64,000 nt of DNA from Macrostomum lignano (GCA_002269645.1 NIVC01000355.1:1-64000); one strand, 5' to 3'; counted from the first letter of the stretch, positions 21,827 through 57,435 are shown. Numbers and translations: made by a program. Notes: generated by a model not told the origin, from the letters alone.

Positions 21827-21900
21827 TAAGTGTTTTTATTTAGTTCTTTAATAAAAGCTTTTAATAAAAAATTTTACACTACTACTTTTAAGCTACTTAG

Positions 21901-26219: not shown

Positions 26220-26568
26220 CTAGCTAATTAGAGCTGGCTGCCAGCAGCCAGAATAATTTTTTATTGCCCCCCTTTACGTGGGGTCCAGTGAGTTTTCTTA
26301 TCAGTTGGCTCTGGCGCAATCAATTAAAATTGGCAGTGAAGTTTCTGGCTGATAAAATTTGCATTGAAAAAGGCCATTTAAAACAGTTTTTCGAATATTT
26401 AATCCCTTAAGCATTGAAGCAGATACAAGAAATTTTAACCATACAATCCCAGGCTGATTACAAATCTTTTGGCGAAAACGCGATCAAAATCGGTCGAGAA
26501 TTGCAATCTCTAGAGCGTTATGGACAAGCATACAAACAAACAAATATTAGAGATTTAGTATATTTAGA
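26220..26568 (-). mobile_element. ~350 bp non-autonomous Helitron-like element (family A), copy 1
   Basis: Minus strand starts TCTAAATATACTAAATCTCTAATATTTGTTTGTTTG and ends with a GGCTG-CTGG-CAGCC hairpin, then AGCTCTAATTAG-CTAG. Confidence 0.7.
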
Positions 26569-26801
26569 TTATGGACAAACATACAAACAAACCTTAGAGA
26601 TTTAGTATATTTAGATTTTCGAATATTTAATCCCTTAAGCATTGAAGCAGATACAAGAAATTTTAACCATACAATCCCAGGCTGATTACAAATCTTTTGG
26701 CGAAAACGCGATCAAAATCGGTCGAGAATTGCAATCTCTAGAGCGTTATGGACATTCAAACATACAAACCTTAGAGATTTAGTATATTTAGATTAGATAG
26801 A

Positions 26802-36258: not shown

Positions 36259-36369
36259 ACGAGTGGAACTCCTCCTTCGGAGGAGAAAGGGGAAGAACTC
36301 CCATCACCGGAATTCTATTCCCTGTAATATCCATCAACTGAAATTCCATGTCTTTAACCCTATCTTCCA

Positions 36370-37130
36370 AATCGTCTCCAAATTCTTTACAAAATCTTTC
36401 AAAGACCATAGCTCAAAGACTCTCAAGTCTCTCATATCTCCTCTCTCCTCTCTCTCATCTCATCTCTACCCCTGCTCCCTTATTTATCTCTTCTCCCTCG
36501 TCTTTCGTCTGTACCTTCTCCTGTCTTCTGTCTCCTCTCTTCACTCTTATCTCTCCCTCTTCTCTCCTCTCTCATATGTCATCTCTACTCACTTATCTAT
36601 CGTCTCTCTTAACCCTCTCTCTCTCTTCTCTTTTCTCTTCTCTCTGCTCTCATTTCTCATATTTCATATACGCTCTGACACTACTTTCTTGTCTCCCATC
36701 TTTCTTCCTCCTTTTCACTATCCCCTGTCTCTTCTCTTCTCTCTTTTCTATTCTCTCCATTCTCTCTTTTCTCCTTTCCTTGCTCCTTTCATCTCTCTCC
36801 TCTCTCCTCACTCTCTTCTCCTTTCGCTTCTCTCTCCTCTCTCTCCTCTCATCTTTACTACCTTATTTATATCTTCTCCCTAGTCTTTCGTCTGTACTCT
36901 CTCCTGTCTCCTCTCTCCCCTCCTCTCTCATCCCTCATCTCCTCATCTCACTCTTTCTTTCTCCTCTACTCTCCCCTCTCTTCTATTGCCTCTGTACGCT
37001 CTTATCCCTCATCTATTCTCTCTCCTATCATCTCCAATCTGTCATGTCTAATCTCTCCACTCAATTATACTCTGTTTTCTATCATCTCTTCTCTCTTCTC
37101 TTTTCAGTCTTCTCTTTACTCTCTTCTCTG
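36370..37130. repeat. Pyrimidine-rich (CT) low-complexity tract
   Basis: Degenerate ctctct/tctcct sequence; the Leu/Ser-rich ORFs are artefacts. Confidence 0.9.
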
Positions 37131-37522
37131 ACTGATTGAAGATGCCAAATCCATCAAGATCCTCTCCGCGAAGCAAAAATCCTGTCTGTGCAACTAAAAA
37201 CCATCGAAATCCTCTCAGTGAAACTGGACTCCTTCGAAATCCTCTCCTTGAAACCTGAATCCATCAAAATTGTTTCCATAAAACAGAAATCAATCATAAA
37301 TTATCTCCGAGAAACAGAAAGCCTCTCCGTGAAGCTGAACATGATCGAAATCCTCTCCGTGAAACTGAACACCATGGAAATCCTTTCGTGAAACTGAACA
37401 CCATCGAAATCCTCTCCACGAAACAGAAATCTTCTCCGTCAGAATTTAAACATTGAAATCGTCTCCGCTAAACTTGACTTAATCGAATTTTTTCCGTCAA
37501 ACAACTCAACCCGCCAGATTCA

Positions 37523-37562
37523 TTAGGGTTAGGCTTAGGGTTAGGGTTAGGGTTAGGGTTAG
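37523..37562 (+). repeat. Interstitial (TTAGGG)n telomere-like repeat, ~6.5 units
   Basis: ttagggttaggcttagggttagggttagggttagggttag. Confidence 0.85.
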
Positions 37563-40500
37563 AACTACGCACAGCTTCGTGTTAAAAGGCACAGATAAAA
37601 ATATTGAACTAATTGAATCAATTCATTGCGCAACCGATTTCACAGTCAGTCAGTATCAGCCTCAGGTAAAGTTAACAAAAACATTGCGCAATCTAAATCA
37701 ACCCTCTAATACACAGCAGCAGTGAGAAGTTGAACCCTCCCCCCAACAATCTTTGCAGATTAAAGTACAATCTTTGCAGAAAGTTAAAAGTATGGAAATC
37801 GTTTTTCAAATGCTGTGCTTTTTCTTTTCATATTTAAAGCAAACAACTTATATCCCCGAACTCAGTGTTGCAAGATCTTTCCAGCAATATAAGTTTCTCC
37901 TCTCAAAGTTTAAAACTCGAGGAACAGTTAGCGTTTGAAACTGTCTGATTTATAGCATTGAAGTATCGAGTGTACGTTCACTGCCTGCTTGCAAGTTGAT
38001 GCATTGAATTTCAATGTCCAACAAATACACAGGGCTGCCCATTGAGAGGCAGGAAAACTTATCAGTAGCCATATCATTGCGCAATTATCTATAAAGTCAG
38101 CCAGTGAGCCAGGGTCCAAGTGTACACACGCAGCCACTGAGAACGCTCCCACCCCCCACTGGAAAGAAAATACACTACAGAGATAGGGAAAAGTTGTGGC
38201 GCAATCACTAAAAATTCATGCATTTTTCAGCTCCAAGCAGAAAGAGGGGACAATTAAGATTATCAAAGGTCAAGATTCAAGTTTTCTGCTTTTTTGAGGA
38301 TCTTAGAAATTAAAATTTCAAAATTAAAATAGCCTATAGCCGACCTCGGATAATTTCCAATCTTCCCATGCTCGTATAAGTTTCAACGCTGAGTTGCCAC
38401 TATTCAAGGAGGAGTTGTCGAAATGACAGACAAACAACACGTGAACTTTAGTATATGTAGAATTTATGAAGACTTTGACTTGAGAAGCATCAGTTTATAT
38501 GGAATTCAATCATAGGAGAGTTGAAAAATCAATGAGCTTTCGCTATTTGGACTGTGTACACTGCGGTGATTCATTTATTTAATCTCAATATTATCTCCAG
38601 CCAATCACTCAATATGAAAATCAGTCTATAGCCCATGCACCTCCCCAAATGCACAGGGAGAGTCTAGGCTTGTGCATTGCACAGTCAGAATTGAAATTAA
38701 TGAAACCCCTCCCCAGCCACTTAACGTTTTCACAATTGAAATCAAGAAATTTTCTATGACAAATTGCTCTGATGCAGTTGAGATTTCGGAACAGAAAATT
38801 ATACCATTCTGTTCAGTTTTTCAAACTCTTTCCAACGGTGTGATTCACTTTTCTGTAGCTTGAAAATTAAAAGCAGAAATTAAGGTGCAACTTTTCCCGT
38901 TTCTTACTTGCAGAGCGCAATGTACACTCTGTGATGAGTTAAAAAATCAAGCCATCCATTCTCGCGCAGTGTGCACCTCCACCCCTTTTTAACACTGAGC
39001 AAGTAGGCCGCCAATTCTCAAGTGCCGGCGACCCTCCCCCAGCTGAAATGAAATACACTGCAGAGATAGGAGAAAAGTTGTGGCGCAACCATACAAAATA
39101 GCGTCAAGTGGGAAGTCCATGGAATGCGATAGACATAGACATCTGGTTTGTGCTGTTTTCTGCTTTTTTGAAGCACTTAAAATTGAAATTTGAAAATGAA
39201 TTTTAAATTGTAGCATCGTCGGGACATTTGACATGTTTTGGTACCGGTTTGAAAGTTGAGTTGCAAGAATCCTAGGAGGAGATCGTCGACAAACCCGGCC
39301 CACCGGCCCACCCTACCACCGGACCACGACGTCAGCTTTAGTATATAGATGATTGATATGATGATTCTTGTTCGCTTTTTCTTGCGTTACGTTTTCTTCT
39401 CTTTAAAAGTTTTTATTAAAAAAATTTCAATATTTTACCATAGCTTTCCGCAGTTTAGCAATGGTTCACCAGAATTTCAGCAATGGTTCACCAGCATTTC
39501 AGCAATTCTTCACCAGCAGTTTAGCAATGGTTCACCAGCATTTCAGCAATTCTTCACCAGCAGTTTAGCAATGCTTCACCAGCATTTCAGCAATGGTTCA
39601 CCAGCATTTCAGCAATGATTTACCAGCATTTCAGCAATGGTTCACCAGCAGTTTAGCAATGCTTCACCAGCAGTTTGCATTAGCTATGGTTCACCAGCAT
39701 TTCAGCAATGCTTCACCAGTAGTTTAACAATGCTTCACCAGCAGTTTAGCAATGGTTCACCAGCAGTTTAGCACTGCTTCACCAGCAGTTTAAAAATGCT
39801 TCACCAGCAGTTTAGCAATGATTCACCAGCACTGTTTTGCACAATCAGTGAGCAGATGGCCACTAATCTTTGCTTATTGCCATATTGCTTCTGGATAATC
39901 GAAACTATATGAAATGCTTTGTCAACTTGCAGGTTAAAGTTGATATGTAATCCCCTTACATATTTATTATTTTTATTTTATACATCAGATTAGCACTGCT
40001 CTCCCCGATTAGCGCTGCTCTTAAAGCTTAGCGTAGCCCCAGCAAAAGTATCTACAAAATGAAAATACTAAAAATTTGCATGAATCCTCATAGGAAACAA
40101 TGATTATTGTCACAAAGATAAATTCGCTGCTTCATTACAGACTCGAACTGCCGACCTTCTGCTAAAAGCCTTATACTATTCAAGAAGTTTAGTAACTTCG
40201 GCAGTTACTAAAACTTCTAATTCAAGATTCAAGATTCAAACTAAATTCAAGAAGTTTAGTAACTTCGGCAGTTTGAAGTTAACCCCCCCCCCAGAAATCG
40301 GCAGTTATCTCCACAACATCCTGAAATTAGCTATCACTTCTAATCCCACAAACAGACTGCAGTCATACTCTTAGCAGCCTGCAGATATCCACTGTGCCGT
40401 CTACAACTTTCATTAACATCAGCAAACTACAATACTTCACTCAGCAGTCCGCAGTTATCCACTCAACAACTTGCACTTAATACTTCACAGCTATTATCCA

Positions 40501-41930
40501 CTTTAAACTCTGTAGATAGTTATCCCCTCAACAGTTTGCTGCTATGCACTCATAAGTGTGGAGGAACTACCTCAGCAGTTTGTTCCATTTTTCCCTTTGC
40601 AGTCTGCATGAATGATCCCTTTGACAATCTGCAGTTCCCTCAGCATCTTCTGTTCTCCTTTCCAATAATCTTCCAATCCTCCAATAATCTAAAAATGTGC
40701 TCAGCATTTTACGGCTCACTAAACAATTTTCAGTACATATCGGCATTCTTAAAAAGCTCAAAATTTAGCACAATACCTTTAAGCAATTTTAACAGCATGG
40801 TCTGCAGTTTAATAGCAATTTCATACTTTCATGGTGCGAGGCAGTACTCGTTGATGGGATCAGTAATGCACGAAGCAGTTTTTTAAAATCAAATTTTATA
40901 AGTGGCTTGTGCCAAGTAGCAAAAATTATTTGCTAATTAATAAGAAATGTTGCAATTAAAATTAATAAAAAATATGTTATATTTAGTCGAGTCACAAGTT
41001 ACAAATGAATGAATTTACTTATTTTAATTATCCACCAGGGAGGCCTATTCCGCCTACTGATGGAAGGGCGCAAAAATCAGACATATATGCTTCGGCACTG
41101 CAGTCAAATACATAGCAGTGATAGCCTGCTCAGTGTGCACAGTTTTGGTGCTGGCAGAGCCATTGCACAGTTAAGTAAATCTCTCAATTTCAATACTTTT
41201 AAAATGCACTGGCTGATTTCTCTCTCCCTCCAGAGTGCCTGCGCAATGCTTGGCACACTGCCTCCTGCTGAAAAGCTCAGAGTCAGTTTATAGCGAGACT
41301 ATGCAGTACGCAGTTGTGGCGCAATCATTTAGAATTGGAATTCAGCCAGTCAAGAATTCAACGCTGCTTGGCCTTCCATTAAAAGCATTTAGATAAACTT
41401 GTTTTTCGAATATTTAATACCTTTAGCATTGAAGCAGATAAAAGAAATTTTACCCCTGGTAGCTGTCCTCTTTCCAGATAATTACAAAACTTTTGGCGAA
41501 AACGCGATCAAAATTGGTCAAGAATTGCAGTCTGTAGAGCGTTACGAAAAACAGATCTTTGACGCTTAAAGAGCTCGCTGTAACCTCCAGAATAATTTTA
41601 TTTTTGACCCCTGGTATGGTTGTGCAATTTAAATAGAGTAATAATCTGGGCAGTTTTCTGATCAGTTGGCTCTGGCGCAATCAATTAAAATTGACTGTGA
41701 AGTTTCTCGCTGATAAAATTTGCATTGAAAAAGGCCATTTAAAACAGTTTTTCCGAATATTTAATCCCTTTAGCATTGAAGCAGATACAAGAAATTTTAA
41801 CTGTCTTCTTTCCAGACAATTTTGAATCTTTTGGCGAAAACGCGATCAAAATCGGGGAAGAATTGCAATCTCTAGAGCGTTATGGACAAGCATACAAACA
41901 AACAAATATTAGAGATTTAGTATATTTAGA

Positions 41931-42630
41931 CTAGCTAATTAGAGCTGGCTGCCAGCAGCCAGAATAATTATTTTTTTGCCCCCCTTTAAGTGGAGCGGAG
42001 TGAGTTTTCTTATCAGTTGGCTCTGGCGCAATCAATTAAAATTGGCAGTGAAGTTTCTGGCTGATAAAATTTGCATTGAAAAAGGCCATTTAAAACAGTT
42101 TTTCGAATATTTAATCCCTTAAGCATTGAAGCAGATACAAGAAATTTTAACCATACAATCCCAGGCTGATTACAAATCTTTTGGCGAAAACGCGATCAAA
42201 ATCGGTCGAGAATTGCAATCTCTAGAGCGTTATGGACAAGCATACAAACAAACAAATATTAGAGATTTAGTATATTTAGACTAGCTAATTAGAGCTGGCT
42301 GCCAGCAGCCAGAATAATTATTTTATTGCCCCCCTTTAAGTGGAGCGGAGTGAGTTTTCTTATCAGTTGGCTCTGGCGCAATCAATTAAAATTGGCAGTG
42401 AAGTTTCTGGCTGATAAAATTTGCATTGAAAAAGGCCATTTAAAACAGTTTTTCGAATATTTAATCCCTTAAGCATTGAAGCAGATACAAGAAATTTTAA
42501 CCATACAATCCCAGGCTGATTACAAATCTTTTGGCGAAAACGCGATCAAAATCGGTCGAGAATTGCAATCTCTAGAGCGTTATGGACAAGCATACAAACA
42601 AACAAATATTAGAGATTTAGTATATTTAGA
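41931..42630 (-). mobile_element. Two exact head-to-tail 350 bp family A Helitron-like copies (41931-42280, 42281-42630)
   Basis: Junction tatatttaga|ctagctaattag reads CTAG|TCTAAATATA on the minus strand at 41930/41931 and 42280/42281. Confidence 0.75.
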
Positions 42631-42811
42631 TTTTCGAATATTTAATCCCTTAAGCATTGAAGCAGATACAAGAAATTTTAACCATACAATCCCAGGCTGA
42701 TTACAAATCTTTTGGCGAAAACGCGATCAAAATCGGTCGAGAATTGCAATCTCTAGAGCGTTATGGACATTCAAACATACAAACCTTAGAGATTTAGTAT
42801 ATTTAGATAGA

Positions 42812-45800
42812 CTAGCCATTTAGCCCCCCGCTGGGGAGCCTTGAAAATGACACCAATTGGTTTTTATTTTTGCACAAGAGTAACTTTACTATTATCGTCC
42901 AAAATATTGATTTCCATTAATCAAAAATTACCTTTTCTCATTTTGGCAGAAATAAATTGCCATTAATCCAAACTTTCATTAGCCAAAAAAGTTTCCTTCA
43001 TCAGCCCAAAACTAAATCAGCAAATAGTGCTTATCCGTTCAAGCACAAACTCTTGATGGATATCGTCAATGGCCGGGGCATATTCTGATCCGCAGCAGGA
43101 GCTCAATATGCAAATCCCTGACGCCCTTAGACCCTCTCTCTATATTAGCCTAAATCAAAGGATCAAACCTTTAATGAATGCGCTGGTATTTCCTATTAGC
43201 AGAAATCAGCATCACTTGTGTGTACTTTTTCATTATCTGAATTACATGAGCTACTTGAGCCGTACTACCTGACTATCTGACAATCGCCCAATAACCTAGT
43301 AACCCCCCCCCCCCCAAAATTCAGCCATCGTCCATGAGCCTTGACATATCAGCGATTCCCCTGTAAGCCTTGACATCTCAGCAATTCCCGCAGTAAGCCT
43401 TGGCATATCAGCAATTCCCCAGTAAGCCTTGAAATCTCAGCAATTGCCCCAGTAAGCCTTGACATCTCAGCAATTGCCCCAGTAAGCCTTGACATATCAG
43501 CAATTCCCCCAGTAAGCATTGAAATCTTAGCAATTCCCAGTAAGACTTGACATCTCAGCATTTCCCCAGTAAGCCTTGACATATCAGCAATTCCCTTAGT
43601 AAGCCTTGAGATCTCAGAAATTCCCCCCATAAGCTCTGAGATCTCAGCAATTGCCCCGGTAAGCCTCGACATCTCAGCAATTCCCCCAGTAAGCCTTGAC
43701 ATCTCAGCAGTTATCATATTAAGCCTCGACATCACAGCAATTAAACTCGAGCCTTGACATCACGCAATTCTCCCAGCGCAGTAAGCCTTGACATACCAAC
43801 AACCCAACTCCCTTTTCCCAAGAATTCAGCAATACCCTTATAAGCCTTGATAACTCAGCAATTTCTTTATGACCTTTGTCAACAGAGCGATTCCACAATG
43901 AACTTTGATTATATCTAAACAAGTCTTTAATTAATGGTCACCCTAACCCATAAGTGAGTCTTGGCGTGTTGGCAATTTCCACCATAAGCCTTGAGCCTCA
44001 GCATTAAAGTAACTTCCTCATAAATAAGCTTTGTAATCAGAATTTCACCGAAAGCCTTGACCTGTCAGCAATTCCCCGTAGTAGAGCCAAAGCATTTAAG
44101 TTTTCCCCCCAAGAGCATTTAATCTTAGCAACTCCTCGATGGATCATTAATGATTGTCACGACGATCGCTCTATAATTGAACCAAAACCATAACCCTTGT
44201 AGTAGAATTTCAGCAATTCCCCAATGAGCTTTGGAAATGTTAGCAATTTCCCCATGAGCCTGAAAATTGAGTGACTAACCTTTTGATATCTTGGCACTTG
44301 CATTTCAACAATTTATTTCTGCAATTTCACAAATGAACCTTGAAATCAAAGCAATTCTCCGCAGAATGACATAATTATAGCAATTCCCCCTGAGCCTTGA
44401 GATCTTATAAATTCTACCGTGAGTCTTGATATCACAGCAATTTCCCATACCAGTATTATGCTCGTAGCAATAGTCTTAGCAGTCTTAACAGTCTAAGCAA
44501 TTCCCGATGAGACTTTTACGTTCGACAGGGCGCTTCATTTATGATTGATATGATGATTCTTGTTCGCTTTTTCTTGCGTTACGTTTTCTTCTCTTTAAAA
44601 GTTTTTATTAAAAAAATTTCAATATTTTACCATAGCTTTCCGCAGTTTAGCAATGGTTCACCAGAATTTCAGCAATGGTTCACCAGCATTTCAGCAATTC
44701 TTCACCAGCAGTTTAGCAATGCTTCACCAGCATTTCAGCAATGGTTCACCAGCATTTCAGCAATGATTTACCAGCATTTCAGCAATGGTTCACCAGCAGT
44801 TTAGCAATGCTTCACCAGCAGTTTGCATTAGCTATGGTTCACCAGCATTTCAGCAATGCTTCACCAGTAGTTTAACAATGCTTCACCAGCAGTTTAGCAA
44901 TGGTTCACCAGCAGTTTAGCACTGCTTCACCAGCAGTTTAAAAATGCTTCACCAGCAGTTTAGCAATGATTCACCAGCACTGTTTTGCACAATCAGTGAG
45001 CAGATGGCCACTAATCTTTGCTTATTGCCATATTGCTTCTGGATAATCGAAACTATATGAAATGCTTTGTCAACTTGCAGGTTAAAGTTGATATGTAATC
45101 CCCTTACATATTTATTATTTTTATTTTATACATCAGATTAGCACTGCTCTCCCCGATTAGCGCTGCTCTTAAAGCTTAGCGTAGCCCCAGCAAAAGTATC
45201 TACAAAATGAAAATACTAAAAATTTGCATGAATCCTCATAGGAAACAATGATTATTGTCACAAAGATAAATTCGCTGCTTCATTACAGACTCGAACTGCC
45301 GACCTTCTGCTAAAAGCCTTATACTATTCAAGAAGTTTAGTAACTTCGGCAGTTACTAAAACTTCTAATTCAAGATTCAAGATTCAAACTAAATTCAAGA
45401 AGTTTAGTAACTTCGGCAGTTTGAAGTTAACCCCCCCCCCCCCAGAAATCGGCAGTTATCTCCACAACATCCTGAAATTAGCTATCACTTCTAATCCCAC
45501 AAACAGACTGCAGTCATACTCTTAGCAGCCTGCAGATATCCACTGTGCCGTCTACAACTTTCATTAACATCAGCAAACTACAATACTTCACTCAGCAGTC
45601 CGCAGTTATCCACTCAACAACTTGCACTTAATACTTCACAGCTATTATCCACTTTAAACTCTGTAGATAGTTATCCCCTCAACAGTTTGCTGCTATGCAC
45701 TCATAAGTGTGGAGGAACTACCTCAGCAGTTTGTTCCATTTTTCCCTTTGCAGTCTGCATGAATGATCCCTTTGACAATCTGCAGTTCCCTCAGCATCTT

Positions 45801-47080
45801 CTGTTCTCCTTTCCAATAATCTTCCAATCCTCCAATAATCTAAAAATGTGCTCAGCATTTTACGGCTCACTAAACAATTTTCAGTACATATCGGCATTCT
45901 TAAAAAGCTCAAAATTTAGCACAATACCTTTAAGCAATTTTAACAGCATGGTCTGCAGTTTAATAGCAATTTCATACTTTCATGGTGCGAGGCAGTACTC
46001 GTTGATGGGATCAGTAATGCACGAAGCAGTTTTTTAAAATCAAATTTTATAAGTGGCTTGTGCCAAGTAGCAAAAATTATTTGCTAATTAATAAAAAATG
46101 TTGCAATTAAAATTAATAAAAAATATGTTATATTTAGTCGAGTCACAAGTTACAAATGAATGAATTTACTTATTTTAATTATCCATCAGGGAGGCCTATT
46201 CCGCCTACTGATGGAAGGGCGCAAAAATCAGACATATATGCTTCGGCACTGCAGTCAAATACATAGCAGTGATAGCCTGCTCAGTGTGCACAGTTTTGGT
46301 GCTGGCAGAGCCATTGCACAGTTAAGTAAATCTCTCAATTTCAATACTTTTAAAATGCACTGGCTGATTTCTCTCTCCCTCCAGAGTGCCTGCGCAATGC
46401 TTGGCACACTGCCTCCTGCTGAAAAGCTCAGAGTCAGTTTATAGCGAGACTATGCAGTACGCAGTTGTGGCGCAATCATTTAGAATTGGAATTCAGCCAG
46501 TCAAGAATTCAACGCTGCTTGGCCTTCCATTAAAAGCATTTAGATAAACTTGTTTTTCGAATATTTAATACCTTTAGCATTGAAGCAGATAAAAGAAATT
46601 TTACCCCTGGTAGCTGTCCTCTTTCCAGATAATTACAAAACTTTTGGCGAAAACGCGATCAAAATTGGTCAAGAATTGCAGTCTGTAGAGCGTTACGAAA
46701 AACAGATCTTTGACGCTTAAAGAGCTCGCTGTAACCTCCAGAATAATTTTATTTTTGACCCCTGGTATGGTTGTGCAATTTAAATAGAGTAATAATCTGG
46801 GCAGTTTTCTGATCAGTTGGCTCTGGCGCAATCAATTAAAATTGACTGTGAAGTTTCTCGCTGATAAAATTTGCATTGAAAAAGGCCATTTAAAACAGTT
46901 TTTCGAATATTTAATCCCTTTAGCATTGAAGCAGATACAAGAAATTTTAACTGTCTTCTTTCCAGACAATTTTGAATCTTTTGGCGAAAACGCGATCAAA
47001 ATCGGTGAAGAATTGCAATCTCTAGAGCGTTATGGACAAGCATACAAACAAACAAATATTAGAGATTTAGTATATTTAGA
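42812..47080 (-). mobile_element. ~4.3 kb composite Helitron-like element, copy 2
   Basis: Matches 26802-31106, with small indels in the internal minisatellites. Confidence 0.6.
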
Positions 47081-47148
47081 TAGACTAGAGCGTTATGGAC
47101 AAGCATACAAACAAACAAATATTAGAGATTTAGTATATTTAGATTAGA

Positions 47149-47498
47149 CTAGCTAATTAGAGCTGGCTGCCAGCATCCAGAATAATTTTTATTGCCCCCA
47201 CCCTTTAAGTGGGTCCAGTGAGTTTTCTTATCAGTTGGCTCTGGCGCAATCAATTAAGATTGACTGTGAAGTTTCTCGCTGATAAAATTTGCATTGAATT
47301 CGCCCATTTAAAACTGTTTTTCGAATATTTAATCCCTTTAGCATTGAAGCAGATACAAGAAATTTTAACCGTCTTCTTTCCAGACAATTTTGAATCTTTT
47401 GGCGAAAACGCGATCAAAATCGGTGAAGAATTGCAGTCTCTAGAGCGTTATGGACAAGCAAGCAAGCATACAAATATTAGAGATTTAGTATATTTAGA
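47149..47498 (-). mobile_element. 350 bp family A Helitron-like element, diverged copy
   Basis: Same TC 5' end and hairpin+CTAG 3' end. Confidence 0.65.
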
Positions 47499-47509
47499 AG
47501 AAGATTAAG

Positions 47510-48030
47510 ATGGATAGAAGAGAGAGAGAGAGAAAGAGAGAAGAGAGAGAGAGAGATAAGAGGAGTTATCGAACAGACACACAAACAACGCACCAGTTTT
47601 AGTATTAGGATAGAAGAGAGAGAGAGAAAGAGAGAAGAGAGAGAGAGAGATAAGAGGAGTTATCGAACAGACACACAAACAACGCACCAGTTTTAGTATT
47701 AGGATAGAAGAGAGAGAGAGAGAAAGAGAGAAGAGAGAGAGAGATAAGAGGAGTTATCGAACAGACACACAAACAACGCACCAGTTTTAGTATTAGGATA
47801 GAAGAGAGAGAGAGAAAGAGAGAAGAGAGAGAGAGAGATAAGAGGAGTTATCGAACAGACACACAAACAACGCACCAGTTTTAGTATTAGGATAGAAGAG
47901 AGAGAGAGAGAAAGAGAGAAGAGAGAGAGAGATAAGAGGAGTTATCGAACAGACACACAAACAACGCACCAGTTTTAGTATTACTCGTAGGATAGAAGAG
48001 AGAGAGAGGGAGAGAGAGAGAGAGAGAGAG
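47510..48030 (-). repeat. Tandem array of Helitron-like 5' module plus (AG)n (continues at 50090-50530)
   Basis: Same module as 12510-13010. The array is interrupted by the Penelope-like element. Confidence 0.85.
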
Positions 48031-50085
48031 GAGGGCGCCTCCAATCTCAGGCACGGACGCGGTACATGTAAAAAGGACAAACAAGTCAAGTTGATTTAAG
48101 TTGCCGATATTTCGAATTAGGTAAATTCTTCGTCAGGGCAAGTGAAAAGTAGCGACAAGTGGTGTTGTAAAAGTTATTAAATAGGCGGGTTAGAGGGGAG
48201 AGAGAGTAGACAGGTAGATAGAGAGCGTACGGTATGTACACTTGGTGTGAGTCGATAAAACACTATTAGAGTTGAAAATGCAAAATAAAAAACAGTGCAC
48301 AAATAGAGTGAACCGCACGTGGACTGCAGCGATCCTACACACGAAATAAATAATGGAGTGGTGCAACTGCCCCGGTGTCTAAAAAGGGGAAAGAGTGACT
48401 CTAAGCACTTTACAAAATGGACCTCAATAAATAAAAAAGGTGAAAAGGCCCTCAAAAACTAAAAAGAGCAATTGTACGATAAGCAAAAGAGTAAAAGTTA
48501 AAAGTGTAGTAAAAAAGTACAGGGTGTCAAGAAACAATAGAAATGTTGATGCAGAATAAATGCTGAGAATAAACAAAAGCTGTGCTTGGGCTAGCGATAA
48601 GAAAAAAAAAATTTTCAAGAAAGGAGCAATAAAAGGCTTGGTAGGTACCGGCAGGGTCTGACAAAGGTAAGTAGTAGGGAAAGTGAAGTAAAAAATCAAA
48701 AGGAAAAAAAATTTTTAAGAAAATTCAATCAGTGGTGGACTCCAGTCGACTGGGACAGAGCAGCTGCCGGAGGTTCCGCCCTTTGGTGTAGGCGGGCAGC
48801 ACCGGGGCCTCGCAGCACCGGGCCACGCGGTCCTTCACCGCGGCCACCAGGGCGTCCGACCTCGCACAATGGGGCAGGATCAGCGGGATGGCCGGGTTGT
48901 GCAGCGTGCCAGCAAGCTCGTTGACGCCGTGCGGGGTTCGAGTCTTTAACACCTCGATGAGCTTGGCGGCCTCGTGGCGCTGCCGCCGCTCGTTCGCTCT
49001 GGGTCCCGTGCTGTCACGAGACCAGATGCCGGTGAAGGCGAAGTCCGCCAAACTGTGGCCATCACTGGTGAAATGGCGGGCCACCGGAGTGTCATGGGCG
49101 TGCCGGATGTCGCCTATGTGCGCCAGCATGCGGCCGCGGATGCTGTTGGCGGTCTCGCCTACGTAGACCGTGTGGTCGCACCGGCGGCAGAACACGGCAT
49201 AGACGGCGTTGGTGGCGTTGCAGTCGATCCGCTGACTGATGATGAGCTGGACTGTCGTGGCTGCTGATCCGGGGCAGACGGAGGCGAACCTGGCGTGCGC
49301 CTGGCAGCACCTGCACAGCCGGGTCGGGTTGCACGGCAGAAAGCCGAATTCCCACCGTCTCGTCGGTAGAAGCCCAGCTCCGTCAGCATCTCGTACTTGA
49401 TCGTGCGCAGGAACCGCCGATTGTAGCCCTGGTGTTGCACCAGACTTGAAAACAGCCCGGTGCACGCTGCGTCGAAATCGGCCATCCGGGAACACCGCCG
49501 GGTGTATCTGAGGAGCTGGGACTTCACCACGCCCCGGAACGTCCGCTTCGGGTGGAAAGAGTCGCGGTGAATGAGCGTTCGGCTGTCGGTCGCTTAAAAT
49601 ACACCTTAGTTGCCAGGCGCTTAACGTCACCCTCGCGGTCCCAGAAGACGGTGGTATCCAGGAAGTTGACCTCGGTGCTGCTGTAGCTCAGCTGCAACCT
49701 GATGTTCGGGTCGAGGCCATCCAGGAGCTCGTGGAAGCAGACCAGCTCGTCTCTCGTTCCGTGCCAGACGCCGAAGATGTCGTCGATGTAGCGCAGCCAC
49801 AGGGCGGGCTTCTGCGGGCTGAGCTCCAGGCCCCGCTGCTCCCAGTAGCCCATGTAGATGTTACTGTAGCTGGGCGCAAACGATTTTCCCATGGCCGTGC
49901 CTTTCACTTGCAGAAAAAATTTGCCATCGAACTCGAAGTCGTTGCGCTCCAGGTTCAGCTTGAGCAAACTGAGGAGGCTCGCGTCCGGGCGCCGGGCGTC
50001 CGGGTGCTCTCTGAAGGCCCTCTGTATGCACTCGAGTCCGGCCGCGGTCGGGATGATAGTGTAAAGGCTGGCGACGTCCATGGTT
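48030..50085 (-). mobile_element. 5'-truncated Penelope-like retroelement (RT + Cys linker + GIY-YIG endonuclease), two frameshifts
   Basis: RT motifs DVASLYT, QVKGTAMGKSFAP, RYIDD, VNFLD, VYFK(P)TDS and GYNRR; linker CNPTRLCRCC; EN AVYAVFCRRCDHTVYVGET, VARHF, PHGVN. Frameshifts near 49592 and ~49360. GC-rich relative to flanks. Confidence 0.92.
48101..48141 (-). ncRNA. Minimal type I hammerhead ribozyme in the PLE 3' pseudo-LTR
   Basis: Minus strand UUGCC-CUGACGA-A-GAAUU(UACCU)AAUUC-GAA-AUAU-C-GGCAA: stem I UUGCC/GGCAA, CUGAnGA core, stem II GAAUU/AAUUC, GAAA, palindromic loopless stem III AUAU, AUC cleavage triplet. Confidence 0.82.
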
Positions 50086-50089
50086 ATTA

Positions 50090-50530
<441 letters not shown>

Positions 50531-50721
50531 CAACGCACCACTTTTAACACAGAAGACATAGAAGAGGGATGAAGAGGGACTCAGATAATGCCATAGACAA
50601 TTAAAATTTGACCCAGAAAACGAAGTGGGTAGTGTTAGACTAAAAATAAGTAGGATTCAGCAGAGAATTCGTTTTCATTTACCCAGTGATCGTTCGACTG
50701 CAATATCTAGATACTTAAGCT

Positions 50722-50979
50722 ATGTCTATTGCACACCTTATCAACTGGTCCCATCTGCCAGTGGATAGTCTCGACGGCGTTACATCTACCGAATATTCTT
50801 TCCTTGCGGAGCTGAGCAGTGTTGATCACCGAGAAGATGCCCAACTGGAGGACTTTATCCATTTCATTACCTATCATTCACGCTCTGAAGATCAGCTGCT
50901 TGGTGTCGTTCTACCGGACGTCGAAGAAGGAAAAGATTTAATTGCTACGGACAGCATGGATTGTCATTGCTTAACTTAA
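50722..50979 (+). pseudogene. Truncated N-terminal fragment of a diverged Crypton recombinase paralog
   Basis: INWSHLPVDSLDGV...HREDAQLEDFIHFI aligns to INWKNIPVDSLNGV...HHDDQALSDFIKWL of 7806-9167. Upstream ccatagac (50591); downstream taatggccatactcgtgttatggccattatt motif. Confidence 0.7.
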
Positions 50980-51409
50980 ATTAAATTATTATAATTGGCT
51001 ACTAGTATGCTTTATATACAATGCAATTAGATAGTATGTTACAGCGTTACTCGTAATGGCCATACTCGTGTTATGGCCATTATTTTACTCCGTAACATAC
51101 AATATAATCTACCATTGCTGATTTCAGCACACTGGTAGGAAAAATGTTGACTGCCCTGCCGATTGGCCATTTAGCGAGGGGGAGGCCGCTATCTCAATAA
51201 ACGCTCAGACCAAGACCGTTCGCCTAATAAAGTTGAACCAACCATACTACAGACACTCTGCGTGGACAGTCAGAGGAATTGGACCATTTTCAAGAACAAA
51301 CCATGCAGACATTTGCTTTGGACACTTGTACTCTAAACACTTGCCCCTGGATCGTGGACACTCAGCGCCGAGTCAATGCTCACCCTATGGACCCAACTCC
51401 GGCCTGTTA

Positions 51410-54400
51410 AACCTCACCTCCAGCCTGCACCACCCCACTAGCCTGCACCACCCCACCTCCAGCCTGCACCACCCCACCAGCCTGCACCACCCCACCTCCA
51501 GCCTGCACCACCCCACCTCCAGCCTGCACCACCCCACCAGCCTGCACCACCCACCTCCAGCCTGCACCACCCCACCAGCCTGCACCACCCCACCTCCAGC
51601 CTGCACCACCCCACCAGCCTGCACCACCCCACCTCCAGCCTGCACCACCCCCACCTCCAGCCTGCACCACCCCACCTCCAGCCTGCCCTACCCCACCTCC
51701 AGCCTGCACCACCCCACCTCCAGCCTGCACCACCCCACCAGCCTGCACCACCCCACCTCCAGCCTGCCCTACCCCACCTCCAGCCTGCACCACCCCACCT
51801 CCAGCCTGCCCTACCCCACCTCCAGCCTGCACCACCCCACCAGCCTGCACCACCCCACCAGCCTGCACCACCCCACTAGCCTGCACCACCCCACCTCCAG
51901 CCTGCACCACCCCACCAGCCTGCACCACCCCACCTCCAGCCTGCACCACTCCCACCTCCAGCCTGCCCTACCCCACCTCCAGCCTGCACCACCCCACCTC
52001 CAGCCTGCACCACCCCACCAGCCTGCACCACCCCACCTCCAGCCTGCACCACCCCACCTCCAGCCTGCACCACCCCACCTCCAGCCTGCCCTACCCCACC
52101 TCCAGCCTGCACCACCCCACCTCCAGCCTGCACCACCCCACCAGCCTGCACCACCCCACCTCCAGCCTGCACCACCCCACCAGCCTGCACCACCCCACCT
52201 CCAGCCTGCACCACCCCCACCTCCAGCCTGCCCTACCCCACCTCCAGCCTGCACCACCCCACCTCCAGCCTGCACCACCCCCACCTCCAGCCTGCACCAC
52301 CCCCACCTCTAGCCTGCACCACTCCCACCTCCAGCCTGCACCACCCCACCTCCAGCCTGCCCTACCCCACCTCCAGCCTGCACCACCCACCTCCGGCCTG
52401 CACCACCCCACCAGCCTGCACCACCCCACCTCCAGCCTGCACCACCCCACCTCCAGCCTGCACCACCCCACCTCCAGCCTGCCCTACCCCACCTCCAGCC
52501 TGCACCACCCCACCTCCAGCCTGCACCACCCCACCAGCCTGCACCACCCCACCTCCAGCCTGCACCACCCCACCAGCCTGCACCACCCCACCTCCAGCCT
52601 GCACCACCCCCACCTCCAGCCTGCCCTACCCCACCTCCAGCCTGCCCTACCCCACCTCCAGCCTGCACCACCCCACCTCCAGCCTGCACCACCCCCACCT
52701 CTAGCCTGCACCACTCCCACCTCCAGCCTGCACCACCCCACCTCCAGCCTGCCCTACCCCACCTCCAGCCTGCACCACCCCACCAGCCTGCACCACCCCA
52801 CCTCCAGTCTGCCCTACCCCAACTCCGGCCTGTTAAACCCCACCTCCAGCCTGCACCACCCCACTAGCCTGCACCACCCCACCTCCAGCCTGCCCTACCC
52901 CACCTCCAGCCTGCACCACCCCACCTCCAGCCTGCACCACCCCACCAGCCTGCACCACCCCACTAGCCTGCACCACCCCACCTCCAGCCTGCACCACCCC
53001 ACCAGCCTGCACCACCCCACCTCCAGCCTGCACCACCCCACCTCCAGCCTGCACCACCCCACCAGCCTGCACCACCCCACCTCCAGCCTGCACCACCCCC
53101 ACCTCTAGCCTGCACCACTCCCACCTCCAGCCTGCACCACCCCACCTCCAGCCTGCCCTACCCCAACTCCGGCCTGTTAAACCCCACCTCCAGCCTGCAC
53201 CACCCCACTAGCCTGCACCACCCCACCTCCAGCCTGCCCTACCCCACCTCCAGCCTGCACCACCCCACCTCCAGCCTGCACCACCCCACCAGCCTGCACC
53301 ACCCCACCTCCAGCCTGCACCACCCCCACCTCCAGCCTGCACCACCCCACCTCCAGCCTGCCCTACCCCACCTCCAGCCTGCACCACCCCACCTCCAGCC
53401 TGCACCACCCCACCAGCCTGCACCACCCCACCTCCAGCCTGCACCACCCCCACCTCCAGCCTGCCCTACCCCACCTCCAGCCTGCACCACCCCACCAGCC
53501 TGCACCACCCCACCTCCAGCCTGCACCACCCCACCTCCAGCCTGCACCACCCCACCTCCAGCCTGCCCTACCCCACCTCCAGCCTGCACCACCCCACCTC
53601 CAGCCTGCACCACCCCACCAGCCTGCACCACCCCACCTCCAGCCTGCACCACCCCACCTCCAGCCTGCCCTACCCCACCTCCAGCCTGCACCACCCCACC
53701 TCCAGCCTGCACCACCCCACCAGCCTGCACCACCCCACCTCCAGCCTGCACCACCCCCACCTCCAGCCTGCACCACCCCACCTCCAGCCTGCCCTACCCC
53801 ACCTCCAGCCTGCACCACCCCACCTCCAGCCTGCACCACCCCACCTCCAGCCTGCACCACCCCACCTCCAGCCTGCACCACCCCACCAGCCTGCACCACC
53901 CCACCTCCAGCCTGCACCACCCCACCAGCCTGCACCACCCCACCTCCAGCCTGCACCACCCCACCTCCAGCCTGCACCACCCCACCTCCAGCCTGCACCA
54001 CCCCACCTCCAGCCTGCCCTACCCCACCTCCAGCCTGCACCACCCCACCAGCCTGCACCACCCCACCTCCAGCCTGCACCACCCCACCTCCAGCCTGCAC
54101 CACCCCACCAGCCTGCACCACCCCACCTCCAGCCTGCACCACCCCCACCTCCAGCCTGCACCACCCCACCTCCAGCCTGCACCACCCCCACCTCCAGCCT
54201 GCCCTACCCCACCTCCAGCCTGCACCACCCCACCAGCCTGCACCACCCCACCTCCAGCCTGCACCACCCCACCTCCAGCCTGCACCACCCCACCTCCAGC
54301 CTGCACCACCCCACCTCCAGCCTGCCCTACCCCACCTCCAGCCTGCACCACCCACCTCCGGCCTGCCCCACCCCACCTCCGGCCTGTCCCACCCCACCTC

Positions 54401-54430
54401 CCACCCTACCCCTGGCCTGCCACACCCCAT
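51410..54430. repeat. C-rich ~18-22 bp minisatellite (ccagcctgcaccaccccacct and variants), ~3 kb
   Basis: Visible tandem array with ccctacccc variants and a recurring ccaactccggcctgttaaac interruption. All overlapping ORFs are artefacts. Confidence 0.95.
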
Positions 54431-54688
54431 CTCCAGTCTGCCCCACTTCAGCTCCACTGCTTTAAAACTCAAGTCTAAGTCCTCGTCGCTTAAAGTGGAC
54501 CCTTTAATTCCTTTTACTCACACAGATTAGATAATTTCTGTGCTGATAGTTTTAGCTATCTTACTGCTTTTTGATCAACTGGTTACAATCAGTTCATACA
54601 CTGTTCGGGACAGCTGCCCTATGCTACACAAATTAGTCAGTTAACTCTTCTAAAACTGCACGTTTTTCACCAACAACTCACATTTCAG

Positions 54689-57435
54689 ATGCAGTCTCAG
54701 CGACTCAGAGCTGAGCGAGCAGCTGCACTCAGCACTGGAGCAGCCAGGCTTCACCGAATCCCGAGCCGCATTGCAGAGCGCGGCTGCCGATGTCCTGCAG
54801 CAGATTCTGAGAAGTCGACTCAGATACGATGACTTTTTTATCGTCGGCAGCTACTCAGAAGGCTGGGGCAACAGCCTGACGACACTGGACGGCAGAACTG
54901 ACGCCAATTCCGACATTGATGTGATGATGTTGCTTCCCGGCCGAGAATACCACCAGAGAGGCCTGTGCGAGTGCGATGGAGCTCCGGAGCAGCACGAGTT
55001 GGTGAACGGGCACATTCAGTGCTCAGGATTCGGTGAGTTCTCTCTTGGGGGTGAAATGGTCTGTGAGTTCTGTTATTAGAATTATTCTGTTATTCCGCTA
55101 GAGATTCTGGCAGTGCAGACGTTTGCTTTTTGCGCGTAAGGCATTGGTGCAGAAAATATTCTGTACGCGATGGCTGAGCTCAGTAAGCAGATCTAAACAA
55201 GAGCCTGACTGTCCTGACAGTCTGGGTTGGCAAATTCCATTTATTATGCACAAGCTGTTGAAACCTGCGGATTATTAACCCGCTGAAATTCAATCTCCAC
55301 TGGAGCCCCAGAAACCAAATTTACTCAAAGCTCGTTTCACATCTATCCTAACTATTAACAAGTTTAGTTTGAGCTTGACTTCAGATTTCAGAAACTGTTT
55401 AAAGTGTTCACAGCAACTAAGCAGAGTAGGCATGCAAAACATCAGCAAAACCAATAAGCAACATATGTGAGGAGTGATAAAATATAATTTAGTATTGAAA
55501 GTGCAAATTGACAGTAGAAGTTCCTGTTTCAGAAGGTTCTCAACAAATGGTTCAACCATATCCTTGAGTTCCGTGTGCTGGGGTTGGTCTATTCTGACAA
55601 GAATGTAAGAAAACTCGACAAGATTGTTGGTGTCAAATTTGAGTAGCATTGGTAAAAGTGGAGCAACGCTATGGAGGGTTAAGTGAAATATTACGCACTT
55701 TAGCAGTTTTTGCACTTTTAGGTAAGAGGACTCAAATTAAGGGAATTCTAAGGTAGTCTGAGACCTCCGCAGTGAGTTTAGGGTGCAAAATATCGAGTCA
55801 TTTGGTTGAGCGGTTTGCGTGTCCATAGCAAAGTTTCACAACAAATTTCACATACTCAGACAGACAGGGTTCTTTCCTAATTATTCCAAACTAAAACTAA
55901 TTATTCCACTGCACAGACTCAAAGCTGCATATTGCTCAATCGGGAACCAAATCGTTTTTACAGCCTCCAATCCTGCTCATGCGACACGCGGATGCACACT
56001 GAGGCCAGCGCTGGACGATGTCTCCGCATGCCGTCTCTGCCGCTACCCGCCCATCGCGCCGCTGCTGCCAAACCGCGTCTCCAACATCCCCCATCCGGTG
56101 CTGGAGGCCCTCCGCAAGGCTCTCACCTCCGCCTCATCGCCCTGCCACGTGGTGCACGCAGCCTCTCCTGACCGAGGCGGCGAAGAGCTCCGCGTGAGCA
56201 CCAGCTTCCTGGAGAACCGGATGCTGCGAAGTCTCTCTACCCTGCAAGGTCAACTGTTTGTCACGCTGAAATACCTGGTCAAGAAGGTCATCTGTCACAA
56301 GAATGGCTTCAATCAGCAAGGCTTGAAGTCCTACCACGTGAAGACCATCACCTTCCGAATGGTGGACGACACGCCGGTCGAGCAGTGGAAGAAGGAGAAC
56401 CTCGTGAGTCTCACGAGACAGTCGCTGCAGATGCTGCTCGACTGTGTGGAGAAGAGCCGAGAGCAGGACAGACAAACACCTGACACACCTGACCGATCTC
56501 GGGGTCGCATCATGAATCATTTCTTTCTCAGCGATGCGGCCATCTACCTCAAGGGTGCGGACAAGGAGAGAGTGGACCAGCATTTGGACGGCATCATGAG
56601 CACACTGAGAACAGTAATCGATCGGCTGCCCCAACTGCTGCAGCAGTTCATCGGCAGTCTCAGACCTGTGAGCGACTCAGGCACATTCTACTTCCACCCG
56701 TTCCAAATCCTGCCGGATCTGAGTCCGATGCCACTCACAGAGTCCAGTGCTCTCGAGTACTATCAGATCTACGACGTGGTGAGAGAGTGTCTGGTGCGTC
56801 TCTCTTGCAGTGACTGCAGCCCGCGATCTCAGGAGTCGCTCACAGAGCTGATTGCCAGACTGTCAGACTGCGCCCTCTCAGCACGGGAGGCTCTCAGAGC
56901 GCTGGCTTGCCTGAAGTTCGGCTACCGAGGAACTGCAGAGAGAGTCGTGAGCTCGTGCTCAGGTCACTCGGTTAGCAGAGGCATCGCTTGGTCTCGTGAG
57001 AAGTCGGCGACTGAAGCGACTGAGGAGTTCGTGATGCGGCATCTGAGGAGCCACGACACGGCATGGAAGTTCTGCTTCAAGTTCGACCAGCGACCGAAAC
57101 TCGAATTCTTGCCAGGAGCTCTGAGGGAGTGCTTTCCCCTCCGGTTGTCGGGCAGTACTGACAATTTCTACATGAACTTCGACGCTCTGCTGTGGGCTCT
57201 GCGGCTCGAGCTGCGGACTGATGGAGAAGCGCGCGCTCAGGACTGGATCCGGGATGTGGCTGAGAGAGAGGACTCGGATGAGCAGGAGCTGCAGGTTGCC
57301 TCTTTTTATGCTTCGAATCGGGAGCAGCTTCAGGAAATATTAAAGAAGCTGAAGATGATGGAAGCAGTTCTTCCTGATGGGCTGAAGAAGAGACTGCTGG
57401 AAAAATGGCAGTTTTTAAGGGCTGTTTGGCAGTGA
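54689..57435 (+). CDS. Mab-21/cGAS-like nucleotidyltransferase (cGLR-like); exons 54689-55032 and 55964-57435, ~604 aa, 5' start not found
   Basis: Exon A: FIVGSYSEGWGNSLTTLDGRTDANSDIDVMM (hGS...DhD). Donor GTGAGT at 55033 (phase 1); acceptor TTTTTACAG at 55963 restores frame (F|ASNPAH). Exon B: LDDVSACR (third acidic residue), ELRVSTSFLENRML, LKYLVK, LKSYHVKTITF, QWKKENLVSL, MNHFFL, all Mab-21 C-lobe motifs. Confidence 0.88.

What the first reader, a model, noticed from the sequence alone, without database searches (positions are those of the whole stretch)
54689..57435. cGAS-like receptor (Mab-21 NTase) with intact catalytic triad and long C-terminal helical extension
Seen: a two-exon frame with GS..EG, SDID and a third Asp (LDDV), plus the SYHxKT C-lobe motif, and a further ~230 aa predicted helical tail after the Mab-21 fold. 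Established: animal cGLRs are pattern-recognition enzymes that make cyclic dinucleotides for STING-type signalling, and most invertebrate members are uncharacterised. Inference: a possibly active innate-immune or transposon-sensing nucleotide second-messenger synthase with a lineage-specific tail, located in a transposon-saturated region. No STING or effector gene is visible in this window.
Basis: partly seen in the sequence, partly recalled or inferred. Interest (0 to 1): 0.8.

Follow-up and report, generated by a model that had tools for sequence, protein, structure and literature searches.

The report
Flatworm ankyrin-fused cGAS-like enzyme gene
The finding is real: these are the last two exons of a flatworm (Macrostomum) gene for a cGAS-like signalling enzyme with ankyrin repeats in front and a family-specific tail. 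The family was already catalogued in 2023, and this copy is split by 48 kb of satellite DNA and is one base out of frame.

Summary
Window 54689-55032 and 55964-57435 (+) form a GT-AG spliced, 604-codon open frame ending at TGA 57433-57435.

**Fold and active site.** An AlphaFold model (pLDDT 91) best matches oyster Cv-cGLR1 and human and mouse cGAS. Profile-profile alignment to canonical Mab-21/cGLR proteins (E 2.8e-31) places G53-S54, D75-x-D77 and D132 on the GS, DxD and third-Asp positions.

**Tail.** About 255 residues after the fold form a conserved, mostly helical domain with no PDB match.

- ATG 54689 is out of frame. Position 54688|54689 is a splice acceptor.
- The true first exon (ATG 5960-6658, four ankyrin repeats) lies 48 kb upstream, across mostly satellite and macro-repeat DNA rather than transposons.
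- As assembled, that exon carries one extra base near 6617, so it stops at its last codon. This is either an assembly error or a recent pseudogenising frameshift.

**Novelty.** The family is a large expansion found only in Macrostomum lignano among named hits. Li et al. 2023 classed it as cGLR and put five members in their in-vitro screen. None is among the 15 active enzymes they describe. This is a new member of a known kind, of moderate-to-low interest.

The parts
5960..6658 (+). Exon 1: start codon, conserved family N-terminus (MEALWRIL...), four ankyrin repeats (aa ~70-198 = 6167-6553) and a linker. Ends at the donor TTTGA|GTAAGT.
   Evidence: ORF list and sequence. Pfam Ank_2 E 6.6e-47. 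tblastn of family proteins. The N-terminus resembles P0008/P0021. P0002 reads ...EPEFE|CSLSDSEL across the junction.
6617..6617 (+). Apparent frame break. One extra base relative to an intact ORF (equivalently, 2 bases missing relative to paralog P0002's K-T-S-S). In the ATG frame the exon ends in TGA at 6656-6658.
   Evidence: tblastn places P0002 aa 1-45 and 46-60 in different frames. Sequence read. Exon lengths 699+344+1472 = 2515 = 3x838+1 (arithmetic).
6659..54688 (+). Putative intron 1, 48,030 bp. It holds 42-bp, 48-bp and 21-bp satellite arrays, a ~2.58-kb macro-repeat in at least 5 copies, a Crypton-like ORF and a Penelope-like RT fragment (both on the - strand).
   Evidence: TRF. Coverage and self-BLAST. 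ORFs. Weak Pfam hits. Family genes are normally compact: P0006 is 890 aa in 2858 bp.
54689..55032 (+). Exon 2: N-terminal spine helix plus the NTase N-lobe, with the GS motif (54846-54851) and D75-I-D77 (54912-54920). Preceded by the acceptor CATTTCAG|.
   Evidence: Same exon boundary in paralog P0001 locus L002. hhalign motif alignment. D75 conserved in 25/25 and D77 in 22/25 family members.
55033..55963 (+). Intron 2 (931 bp, GTGAGT...TTTTTACAG, phase 1).
   Evidence: The homologous intron is 370 bp in L002.
55964..56667 (+). Exon 3, first part: third catalytic Asp D132 (56014-56016), LRVSTSFLE, the Mab-21_C helices (Pfam aa 215-279 = 56263-56457), SYHVKT (56329-56346) and MNHFF (56512-56526).
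   Evidence: Model secondary structure.
56668..57435 (+). Exon 3, second part: family-specific C-terminal domain (aa ~350-604, mostly helices plus three short strands) and the stop codon TGA 57433-57435.
   Evidence: Model pLDDT 85-98 over most of it. Conserved across the family. No Pfam hit. No significant PDB or BFVD structural match.

Best explanation
The finding covers exons 2 and 3 of a three-exon gene from Macrostomum lignano or a very close relative. The gene belongs to a large, lineage-specific family of cGAS-like receptors.

**Shown**
- The encoded protein has the bilobal cGAS/Mab-21 nucleotidyltransferase fold.
- The Gly-Ser loop and the three metal-binding acidic residues are intact.
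- The fold is followed by a conserved domain of about 255 residues that is known only in this family.
- The family's normal architecture puts ankyrin repeats in front. The cognate ankyrin exon, carrying the start codon, sits 48 kb upstream on the same strand with matching splice phase.

**Inferred mechanism**
- Like other cGLRs, the protein rests inactive.
- A ligand is sensed through the ankyrin repeats and/or the C-terminal domain. It is probably not long double-stranded nucleic acid, given the near-neutral charge.
- Ligand binding orders the activation loop. The enzyme then condenses two NTPs into a cyclic or linear oligonucleotide second messenger that switches on a downstream receptor.

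**State of this copy**
- The NTase-tail frame is perfectly preserved.
- The assembled sequence has one base too many at the end of the ankyrin exon.
- The copy is therefore either intact with an assembly indel or a very recently disabled paralog.
For: **Family identity**
- 35-39 M. lignano homologs; the best are 88-92% identical.
- 86 clusters at 50% identity reach E<=1e-30.
- All 15 tail-bearing representatives that carry a source name are M. lignano.

**Fold**
- AF2 model with pLDDT 91.4 and pTM 0.91.
- Foldseek PDB hits: Cv-cGLR1 8gjw (E 7.4e-8), cGAS (E ~2e-7, TM to target 0.5-0.57), MAB21L1, MB21D2, MiD51 and bacterial CdnD.

**Active site**
- hhalign against 23 canonical Mab-21/cGLR proteins: probability 99.9%, E 2.8e-31. 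It aligns GS, SDxD, the third Asp, WRxSFS/LRVSTS and SYHxKT.
- The canonical proteins carry PF03281 plus PF20266.
- P0145's third Asp aligns with cGAS 'VDITLA' in PDB 8ol1, and the family HMM aligns D132 to it.
- Conservation in the family: G53 25/25, S54 24/25, D75 25/25, D77 22/25, D132 21/25.

**Preservation of this copy**
- It keeps 40/40 highly conserved family positions and 68/70 subfamily positions.

**Ankyrin exon**
-. Paralog P0002 spans the same junction.

**Prior classification**
- Li et al. 2023 list five M. lignano proteins of this family (#89-93) among 140 cGLRs cloned for their screen. They define the motif [DE]h[DE]h-X50-90-h[DE]h, which D75-I-D77-V ... L-D132 fits with 52 residues between.
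Against: - The NTase half does not reach any Pfam Mab-21 (PF03281) score. Mab-21_C is only 24.4 bits against a cut-off of 24.1.
- The third motif reads L-D-D rather than h-D-h in this copy.
- No enzymatic activity is known for any family member. The 15 active enzymes described by Li et al. come from insects, anemones, molluscs, hydras and corals, not flatworms.
- The ankyrin exon is out of frame by one base and is separated from the rest by 48 kb, whereas paralog P0006 fits 890 aa into 2.9 kb.
- The closest paralog with DNA (P0001) also lacks a nearby 5' exon and is annotated as partial.
- dN/dS against that paralog is high: 0.73 overall and 0.94 in the tail.
- No transcript evidence could be consulted.
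- No receptor for the presumed signal is known in this animal.
Confidence: 0.72

Rival explanations
1. This copy is a pseudogene or decaying duplicate. A frameshift at the end of the ankyrin exon, together with expansion of satellites between the exons, has already disconnected the start codon from the NTase frame. The intact-looking NTase-tail ORF is then a young relic.
For: - There is one extra base near 6617, so the ATG-5960 frame ends at TGA 6656-6658.
- No in-frame ATG lies upstream of the catalytic motifs in exons 2-3.
- SL trans-splicing at 54688|54689 would put the leader's terminal ATG (SL sequence from PMC8629364) in the wrong frame.
- The gap is 48 kb, against compact paralogs.
- dN/dS is 0.73 against the nearest paralog, which is itself annotated partial.
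Against: - There are 604 codons without a stop or frameshift, and 40/40 conserved family positions are kept.
- Both splice sites of both introns are canonical and phase-compatible.
- With about 118 substitutions separating it from P0001, roughly five nonsense changes would be expected under neutrality. That estimate is my own; none is seen.
- A single-base indel is a common long-read assembly error.
Confidence: 0.35
2. It is a catalytically silent Mab-21-fold protein that acts as a scaffold or adaptor, like MAB21L1 or MiD49/51. In that case the ankyrin repeats and the tail do the work.
For: - MAB21L1, MB21D2 and MiD51/49 are among the structural matches.
- No family member is reported active.
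- PF03281 does not hit.
Against: - The GS loop and all three acidic residues are present here and conserved in 21-25 of 25 divergent paralogs down to 27% identity. That level of conservation is not expected without catalysis.
- Li et al. note that Mab21L1/2/3 lack a predicted functional active site, unlike this protein.
Confidence: 0.12
3. One reading: a self-contained two-exon gene starting at ATG 54689.
For: - An ATG sits exactly at 54689.
- A public gene model (P0005) of a near-identical copy starts there.
Against: - That ATG is in another frame and stops after 47 codons at 54832.
- P0005 reaches the Mab-21 frame only by skipping sequence, and it runs on into downstream repeat DNA.
- Paralogs continue upstream into ankyrin repeats at exactly this boundary.
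Confidence: 0.02

Closest known systems
Macrostomum lignano cGLRs in the Li et al. 2023 screen (PAA86972.1, PAA45980.1, PAA57558.1, PAA93208.1, PAA68676.1; PMC9980059, supplement 3, #89-93)
   Same: Same family. They share the GSxxEGWG loop, SDID, LRxSTSFLE, SYHAKT, MxHFF and FxFHPF motifs and the same C-terminal domain.
   Different: They are different paralogs, roughly 30-40% identical to the window protein by comparison with the related representatives in A3. They were expressed as truncated constructs. They are not among the 15 active enzymes the paper describes.
Crassostrea virginica Cv-cGLR1 (PDB 8gjw) and Drosophila cGLR1 (8gjy)
   Same: Best structural match (E 7.4e-8). Same bilobal NTase fold and the same catalytic motif positions.
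   Different: - Only about 16% identity.
- Cv-cGLR1 is a stand-alone basic dsDNA sensor.
- The window protein is near-neutral (pI 6.4-6.9), has a longer loop between the GS and DxD motifs, and has a short 52-residue spacer before the third Asp.
- It also carries ankyrin repeats and a tail of about 255 residues.
Human/mouse cGAS
   Same: Same fold (TM to target 0.52-0.57). The Mab-21_C helices align by sequence (E 1.2e-5). The third Asp aligns transitively with cGAS 'VDITLA'.
   Different: There is no zinc-thumb or basic DNA-binding surface evident from the sequence. There is no disordered basic N-terminus. Ankyrin and tail domains are present instead.
ANK- or TPR-fused cGLRs of corals and molluscs (minor architectures in Li et al. 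2023)
   Same: A cGLR core fused to repeat modules that presumably bind a ligand or partner. Distant hits such as bivalve P0128 carry TPRs after the Mab-21 fold.
   Different: hhalign aligns only residues 7-304 with those proteins. The flatworm tail is not detectably related to their extensions.
Bacterial CD-NTases (CdnD, CdnG)
   Same: Weaker structural matches (E ~1e-3). Same catalytic chemistry is expected.
   Different: Much more distant. No Mab-21_C-type helices by sequence.

Membership tests
cGAS-like receptors (cGLR; Mab-21 superfamily NTases) | Bilobal cGAS/Mab-21 nucleotidyltransferase fold | tested here: met
   AF2 model with pLDDT 91.4. The 29 Foldseek PDB hits with E<=0.001 are all cGLR1, cGAS, MAB21L1, MB21D2 or MiD51.
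cGAS-like receptors (cGLR; Mab-21 superfamily NTases) | Active-site motif: GS loop plus [DE]h[DE]h - X50-90 - h[DE]h (as defined in Li et al. 2023) | tested here: met
   G53-S54; D75-I-D77-V; 52 residues; L131-D132. The positions align to canonical cGLRs by hhalign (E 2.8e-31) and to the cGAS third Asp transitively. Caveat: the residue after D132 is Asp here and is hydrophobic in most paralogs.
cGAS-like receptors (cGLR; Mab-21 superfamily NTases) | Pfam Mab-21 NTase domain (PF03281) match | tested here: not met
   No hit for the window protein or for any of 25 family members. The N-lobe is too divergent for the model.
cGAS-like receptors (cGLR; Mab-21 superfamily NTases) | Pfam Mab-21_C (PF20266) match | tested here: met
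   24.4 bits against a cut-off of 24.1 for the window protein. 23 of 25 family members hit, best E 7.5e-10.
cGAS-like receptors (cGLR; Mab-21 superfamily NTases) | Ligand-dependent synthesis of a nucleotide second messenger | not testable with these tools
   Needs biochemistry. Five paralogs were in the Li et al. screen and are not among the 15 active enzymes described.
cGAS-like receptors (cGLR; Mab-21 superfamily NTases) | A cognate downstream receptor (STING or other) in the same genome | not tested
   None is present in the window. The literature at hand only says that S. mansoni lacks cGAS and STING.
Macrostomum ANK-cGLR-tail family | Family-specific C-terminal domain with FxFHPF, DSAWKFCF and NFDAL motifs | tested here: met
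   Alignments A1-A3. 40/40 conserved positions are kept.
Macrostomum ANK-cGLR-tail family | N-terminal ankyrin repeats in the same reading frame as the NTase | tested here: inconclusive
   The ankyrin exon is present on the same strand with a matching donor and phase. It lies 48 kb away and is one base out of frame as assembled.

The most novel reading that the evidence does not exclude
The Macrostomum ANK-cGLR-tail family could be a flatworm-specific innate-immune sensor system. In this reading the novel C-terminal domain or the ankyrin repeats recognise a non-nucleic-acid ligand, and the nucleotide signal acts through a receptor other than canonical STING. In some paralogs the sensor is wired directly to cell death by fusion to a caspase. 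The window copy would be a working member whose huge satellite-filled intron is tolerated.
Probability: 0.2. Interest if true: 0.7.

Novelty: new member of a known kind. Interest (0 to 1): 0.33.

Why it matters
Most flatworms are reported to have lost cGLR signalling (Li et al. 2023). Macrostomum lignano, a laboratory model amenable to RNAi and transgenesis, carries dozens of divergent cGLR genes with ankyrin repeats and a C-terminal domain of unknown fold. None has a known ligand, product or receptor.

The family is therefore a tractable place to look for new cGLR ligands and new downstream pathways. The caspase-fused paralogs hint at a direct link to cell death.

The particular copy in this window adds little beyond one more paralog. 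It also shows how satellite expansion and single-base errors confuse gene models: the public model of a near-identical copy starts at an out-of-frame ATG.

Tried and rejected
- **Start at ATG 54689.** Rejected because it is in the wrong frame.\n- **SL trans-splicing at 54688|54689 or nearby AGs supplying the start codon.** The M. lignano leader ends in ATG and the acceptor fits the TTNCAG motif. However, the leader ATG falls in the 47-codon frame. Rejected by reading the sequence.\n- **A rescuing alternative donor.** AA|GTTCAT at 6615/6616 would restore the frame, but it is a poor donor. Kept only as a remote possibility.\n- **A 17-nt mini-intron at 6600-6616.** Rejected as too short.\n- **Single-sequence PDB search.** Found nothing.\n- **First AF2 run with 10 close paralogs.** It left the NTase core at pLDDT below 50. 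BFVD gave none.

Full report
**What is in the sequence.**
- On the + strand, 54690-55032 and 55964-57435 form one open frame of 604 codons ending at TGA 57433-57435.
- They are joined by a canonical phase-1 intron: TTCG|GTGAGT ... TTTTTACAG|CC.
  - GSYSEGWG at aa 53-60.
  - SDIDV at aa 74-78.
  - ALDDV with D132.
  - LRVSTSFLE.
  - SYHVKT at aa 237-242.
  - MNHFF at aa 298-302.
- The ATG at 54689 is not part of this frame. It opens a 47-codon ORF that stops at 54832.
- In the Mab-21 frame the first Met is M79, after the DxD motif.
- The bases before 54689 read CATTTCAG, a splice acceptor.

**Whose gene it is.**
- The translation hits Macrostomum lignano proteins at E=0. The best are 88-92% identical, and none is identical. 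The window therefore comes from that flatworm or a very close relative, or from a copy that is not in the databases.
- Full-length paralogs (P0006, P0008, P0015; 870-930 aa) carry ankyrin repeats in front of the NTase.
- tblastn of the family against the window finds one ankyrin exon at 5960-6658 (+) and nothing else.
- That exon starts with the family's conserved N-terminus and has four ankyrin repeats (Pfam Ank_2, E 6.6e-47). It ends in TTTGA|GTAAGT.
- Paralog P0002 reads ...EPEFE|CSLSDSEL... across exactly this junction. The GA left by the donor plus A54689 make that Glu codon.
- The gene is therefore three exons: 5960-6658, 54689-55032 and 55964-57435.

**Two anomalies.**
- The first intron would be 48,030 bp, whereas P0006 packs 890 aa into 2,858 bp. 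The gap contains:
  - 37% short-period tandem arrays (42-bp x99, 48-bp x84, 21-bp x146).
  - A 2.58-kb unit present at least five times at 99.5-100% identity.
  - A Crypton-like ORF and a Penelope-like RT fragment on the other strand, supported only by weak Pfam hits.
- The three exons sum to 2,515 nt, one more than a multiple of three.
  - P0002's residues 1-45 and 46-60 map to different frames of exon 1.
  - The shift is at about 6617: AAG-T-TCA here against K-T-S in P0002.
  - In the ATG frame, exon 1 therefore ends in TGA at its last codon.
  - I cannot tell an assembly indel from a real frameshift.
- SL trans-splicing does not rescue the frame. The leader ends in ATG (PMC8629364), but that ATG would fall in the 47-codon frame.

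**Is it a cGAS-like NTase?**
- Pfam gives only Mab-21_C, at 24.4 bits against a cut-off of 24.1. It gives no PF03281 hit. 23 of 25 family members hit Mab-21_C.
- An exhaustive profile search finds 1,058 proteins. The distant ones (E about 1e-12 to 1e-15) carry both Mab-21 Pfam domains.
- Of the five distant hits looked up, one had no source name and one only 'hypothetical protein'. The three with an organism name are from bivalves (Sinanodonta, Mytilus) and an annelid (Lamellibrachia).
- hhalign of the family against 23 such proteins gives probability 99.9%, E 2.8e-31 over 281 columns. It aligns the GS loop, SDxD, the third Asp, the (W/L)RxS(F/T)S strand and SYHxKT.
- One of those proteins (P0145) aligns its third Asp with 'VDITLA' of human cGAS in PDB 8ol1. 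The family HMM puts D132 on the same column.
- A first AlphaFold run with 10 close paralogs failed in the core. With 25 diverse paralogs the model reached pLDDT 91.4 and pTM 0.91.
- Foldseek against the PDB returns Cv-cGLR1 (E 7.4e-8), many cGAS entries (TM to target 0.5-0.57), MAB21L1, MB21D2 and MiD51. Bacterial CdnD follows more weakly.
- Across paralogs down to 27% identity, conservation is G53 25/25, S54 24/25, D75 25/25, D77 22/25 and D132 21/25.
- The fold and the catalytic set are therefore confirmed. Activity is not.

**The tail.**
- Residues about 350-604 are modelled with high confidence as helices plus three short strands.
- The tail is conserved throughout the family.
- It has no Pfam hit.
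- It is not aligned by hhalign to the extensions of mollusc cGLRs.
- It gives no significant structural match in the PDB or BFVD.
- Every tail-bearing representative that carries a source name (15 of the 16 I looked up) is from M. lignano. The exception in the wider hit list is a 1-kb contig binned as a 'Kangiellaceae bacterium' (P0030), which is most likely eukaryotic contamination.

**State of this copy.**
- The NTase-tail frame keeps 40/40 highly conserved family positions and 68/70 subfamily positions.
- Against the nearest paralog with DNA (P0001, locus L002; same exon layout, intron 370 bp), dS is 0.088. dN/dS is 0.73 overall, 0.56 in the NTase half and 0.94 in the tail.
- That is compatible with relaxed constraint or with the fast evolution typical of immune gene families. 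Both ORFs are nevertheless intact.
- P0001 also has no ankyrin exon within 10 kb and is annotated as partial.

**What is already known.**
- Li et al. [quoted passage not shown]
- Their list of 140 cloned cGLRs nevertheless includes five M. lignano proteins that plainly belong to this family.
- The 15 active enzymes they describe come from other phyla.
- They also note ANK- and TPR-fused cGLRs as minor architectures, and they report that nucleic-acid-sensing cGLRs have pI above 8.5.
- The window protein has pI 6.4 (NTase part 6.9), and the family median is 6.4.

**Verdict.**
- The gene model, the start codon and the description of the neighbourhood need correction.
- Whether this copy is intact is unresolved.
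- The family is already catalogued, so this is a new member of a known kind.

Noticed in passing
L003 3001-6651 (NIVC01002235.1; protein P0076 = PAA59752.1); also P0177, P0095: Some paralogs of this family are fused to ankyrin repeats and a caspase domain (Pfam Peptidase_C14, E ~1e-25). In L003 most of the cGLR-tail part (from about residue 130) and the ankyrin repeats share one uninterrupted 680-codon ORF. The caspase is joined by two short introns (68 and 87 bp), so the fusion looks genuine.
   Followed up: partly
window 54689-54832 and 61582-63580; protein P0005: The public gene model of a near-identical copy (P0005) starts at the out-of-frame ATG and skips sequence to reach the NTase frame. 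It then runs on into downstream repeat DNA. This is a mis-annotation caused by the missing 5' exon.
   Followed up: partly
window 28527-47000: A ~2.58-kb unit is repeated at least five times at 99.5-100% identity. Each copy contains a 22-bp microarray (GCAGTTCAGCAATGCTTCACCA). This is either a very young macro-satellite or an assembly artefact.
   Followed up: partly
window 13489-17632, 17802-21826, 51411-54401: Three large satellite arrays: 42 bp x99 at 99% match, 48 bp x84 (higher-order 264 bp), and a GC-rich 21 bp x146. Together with other arrays they cover 37% of the putative intron.
   Followed up: no
window 1-3439 and 58561-60621: Very long tetranucleotide microsatellites, (AGAT)n of 3.4 kb and (CAGA)n of about 2 kb. 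They flank the locus at the start of the window and downstream of the gene.
   Followed up: no
window 48725-50129 (-): Two overlapping ORFs carry a YIDD reverse-transcriptase motif (weak RVT_1, E 0.016) and a GIY-YIG-like segment. From motifs alone this looks like a Penelope-like retroelement fragment.
   Followed up: partly
window 7806-9167 (-): An intact 453-codon ORF with weak Phage_integrase and QRICH1 hits (E 0.02-0.04). It resembles a Crypton-type tyrosine-recombinase gene and sits just downstream of the ankyrin exon on the opposite strand.
   Followed up: partly
window 6232-6532: The ankyrin repeats are themselves a 99-bp tandem repeat (3 copies, 90% match), which indicates recent repeat duplication within the exon.
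   Followed up: no
protein P0030 (NCBI 'Kangiellaceae bacterium' MAG, 1,065-bp contig): A 347-aa fragment 41-44% identical to the flatworm NTase-tail is deposited under a bacterial MAG. It is almost certainly animal DNA mis-binned, and it hints that the family exists in another marine animal.
   Followed up: no
protein P0036 (M. lignano, 1346 aa): A gene model with two complete cGLR-tail units in tandem separated by ankyrin repeats. It parallels the multi-cGLR fusions mentioned by Li et al.
   Followed up: no
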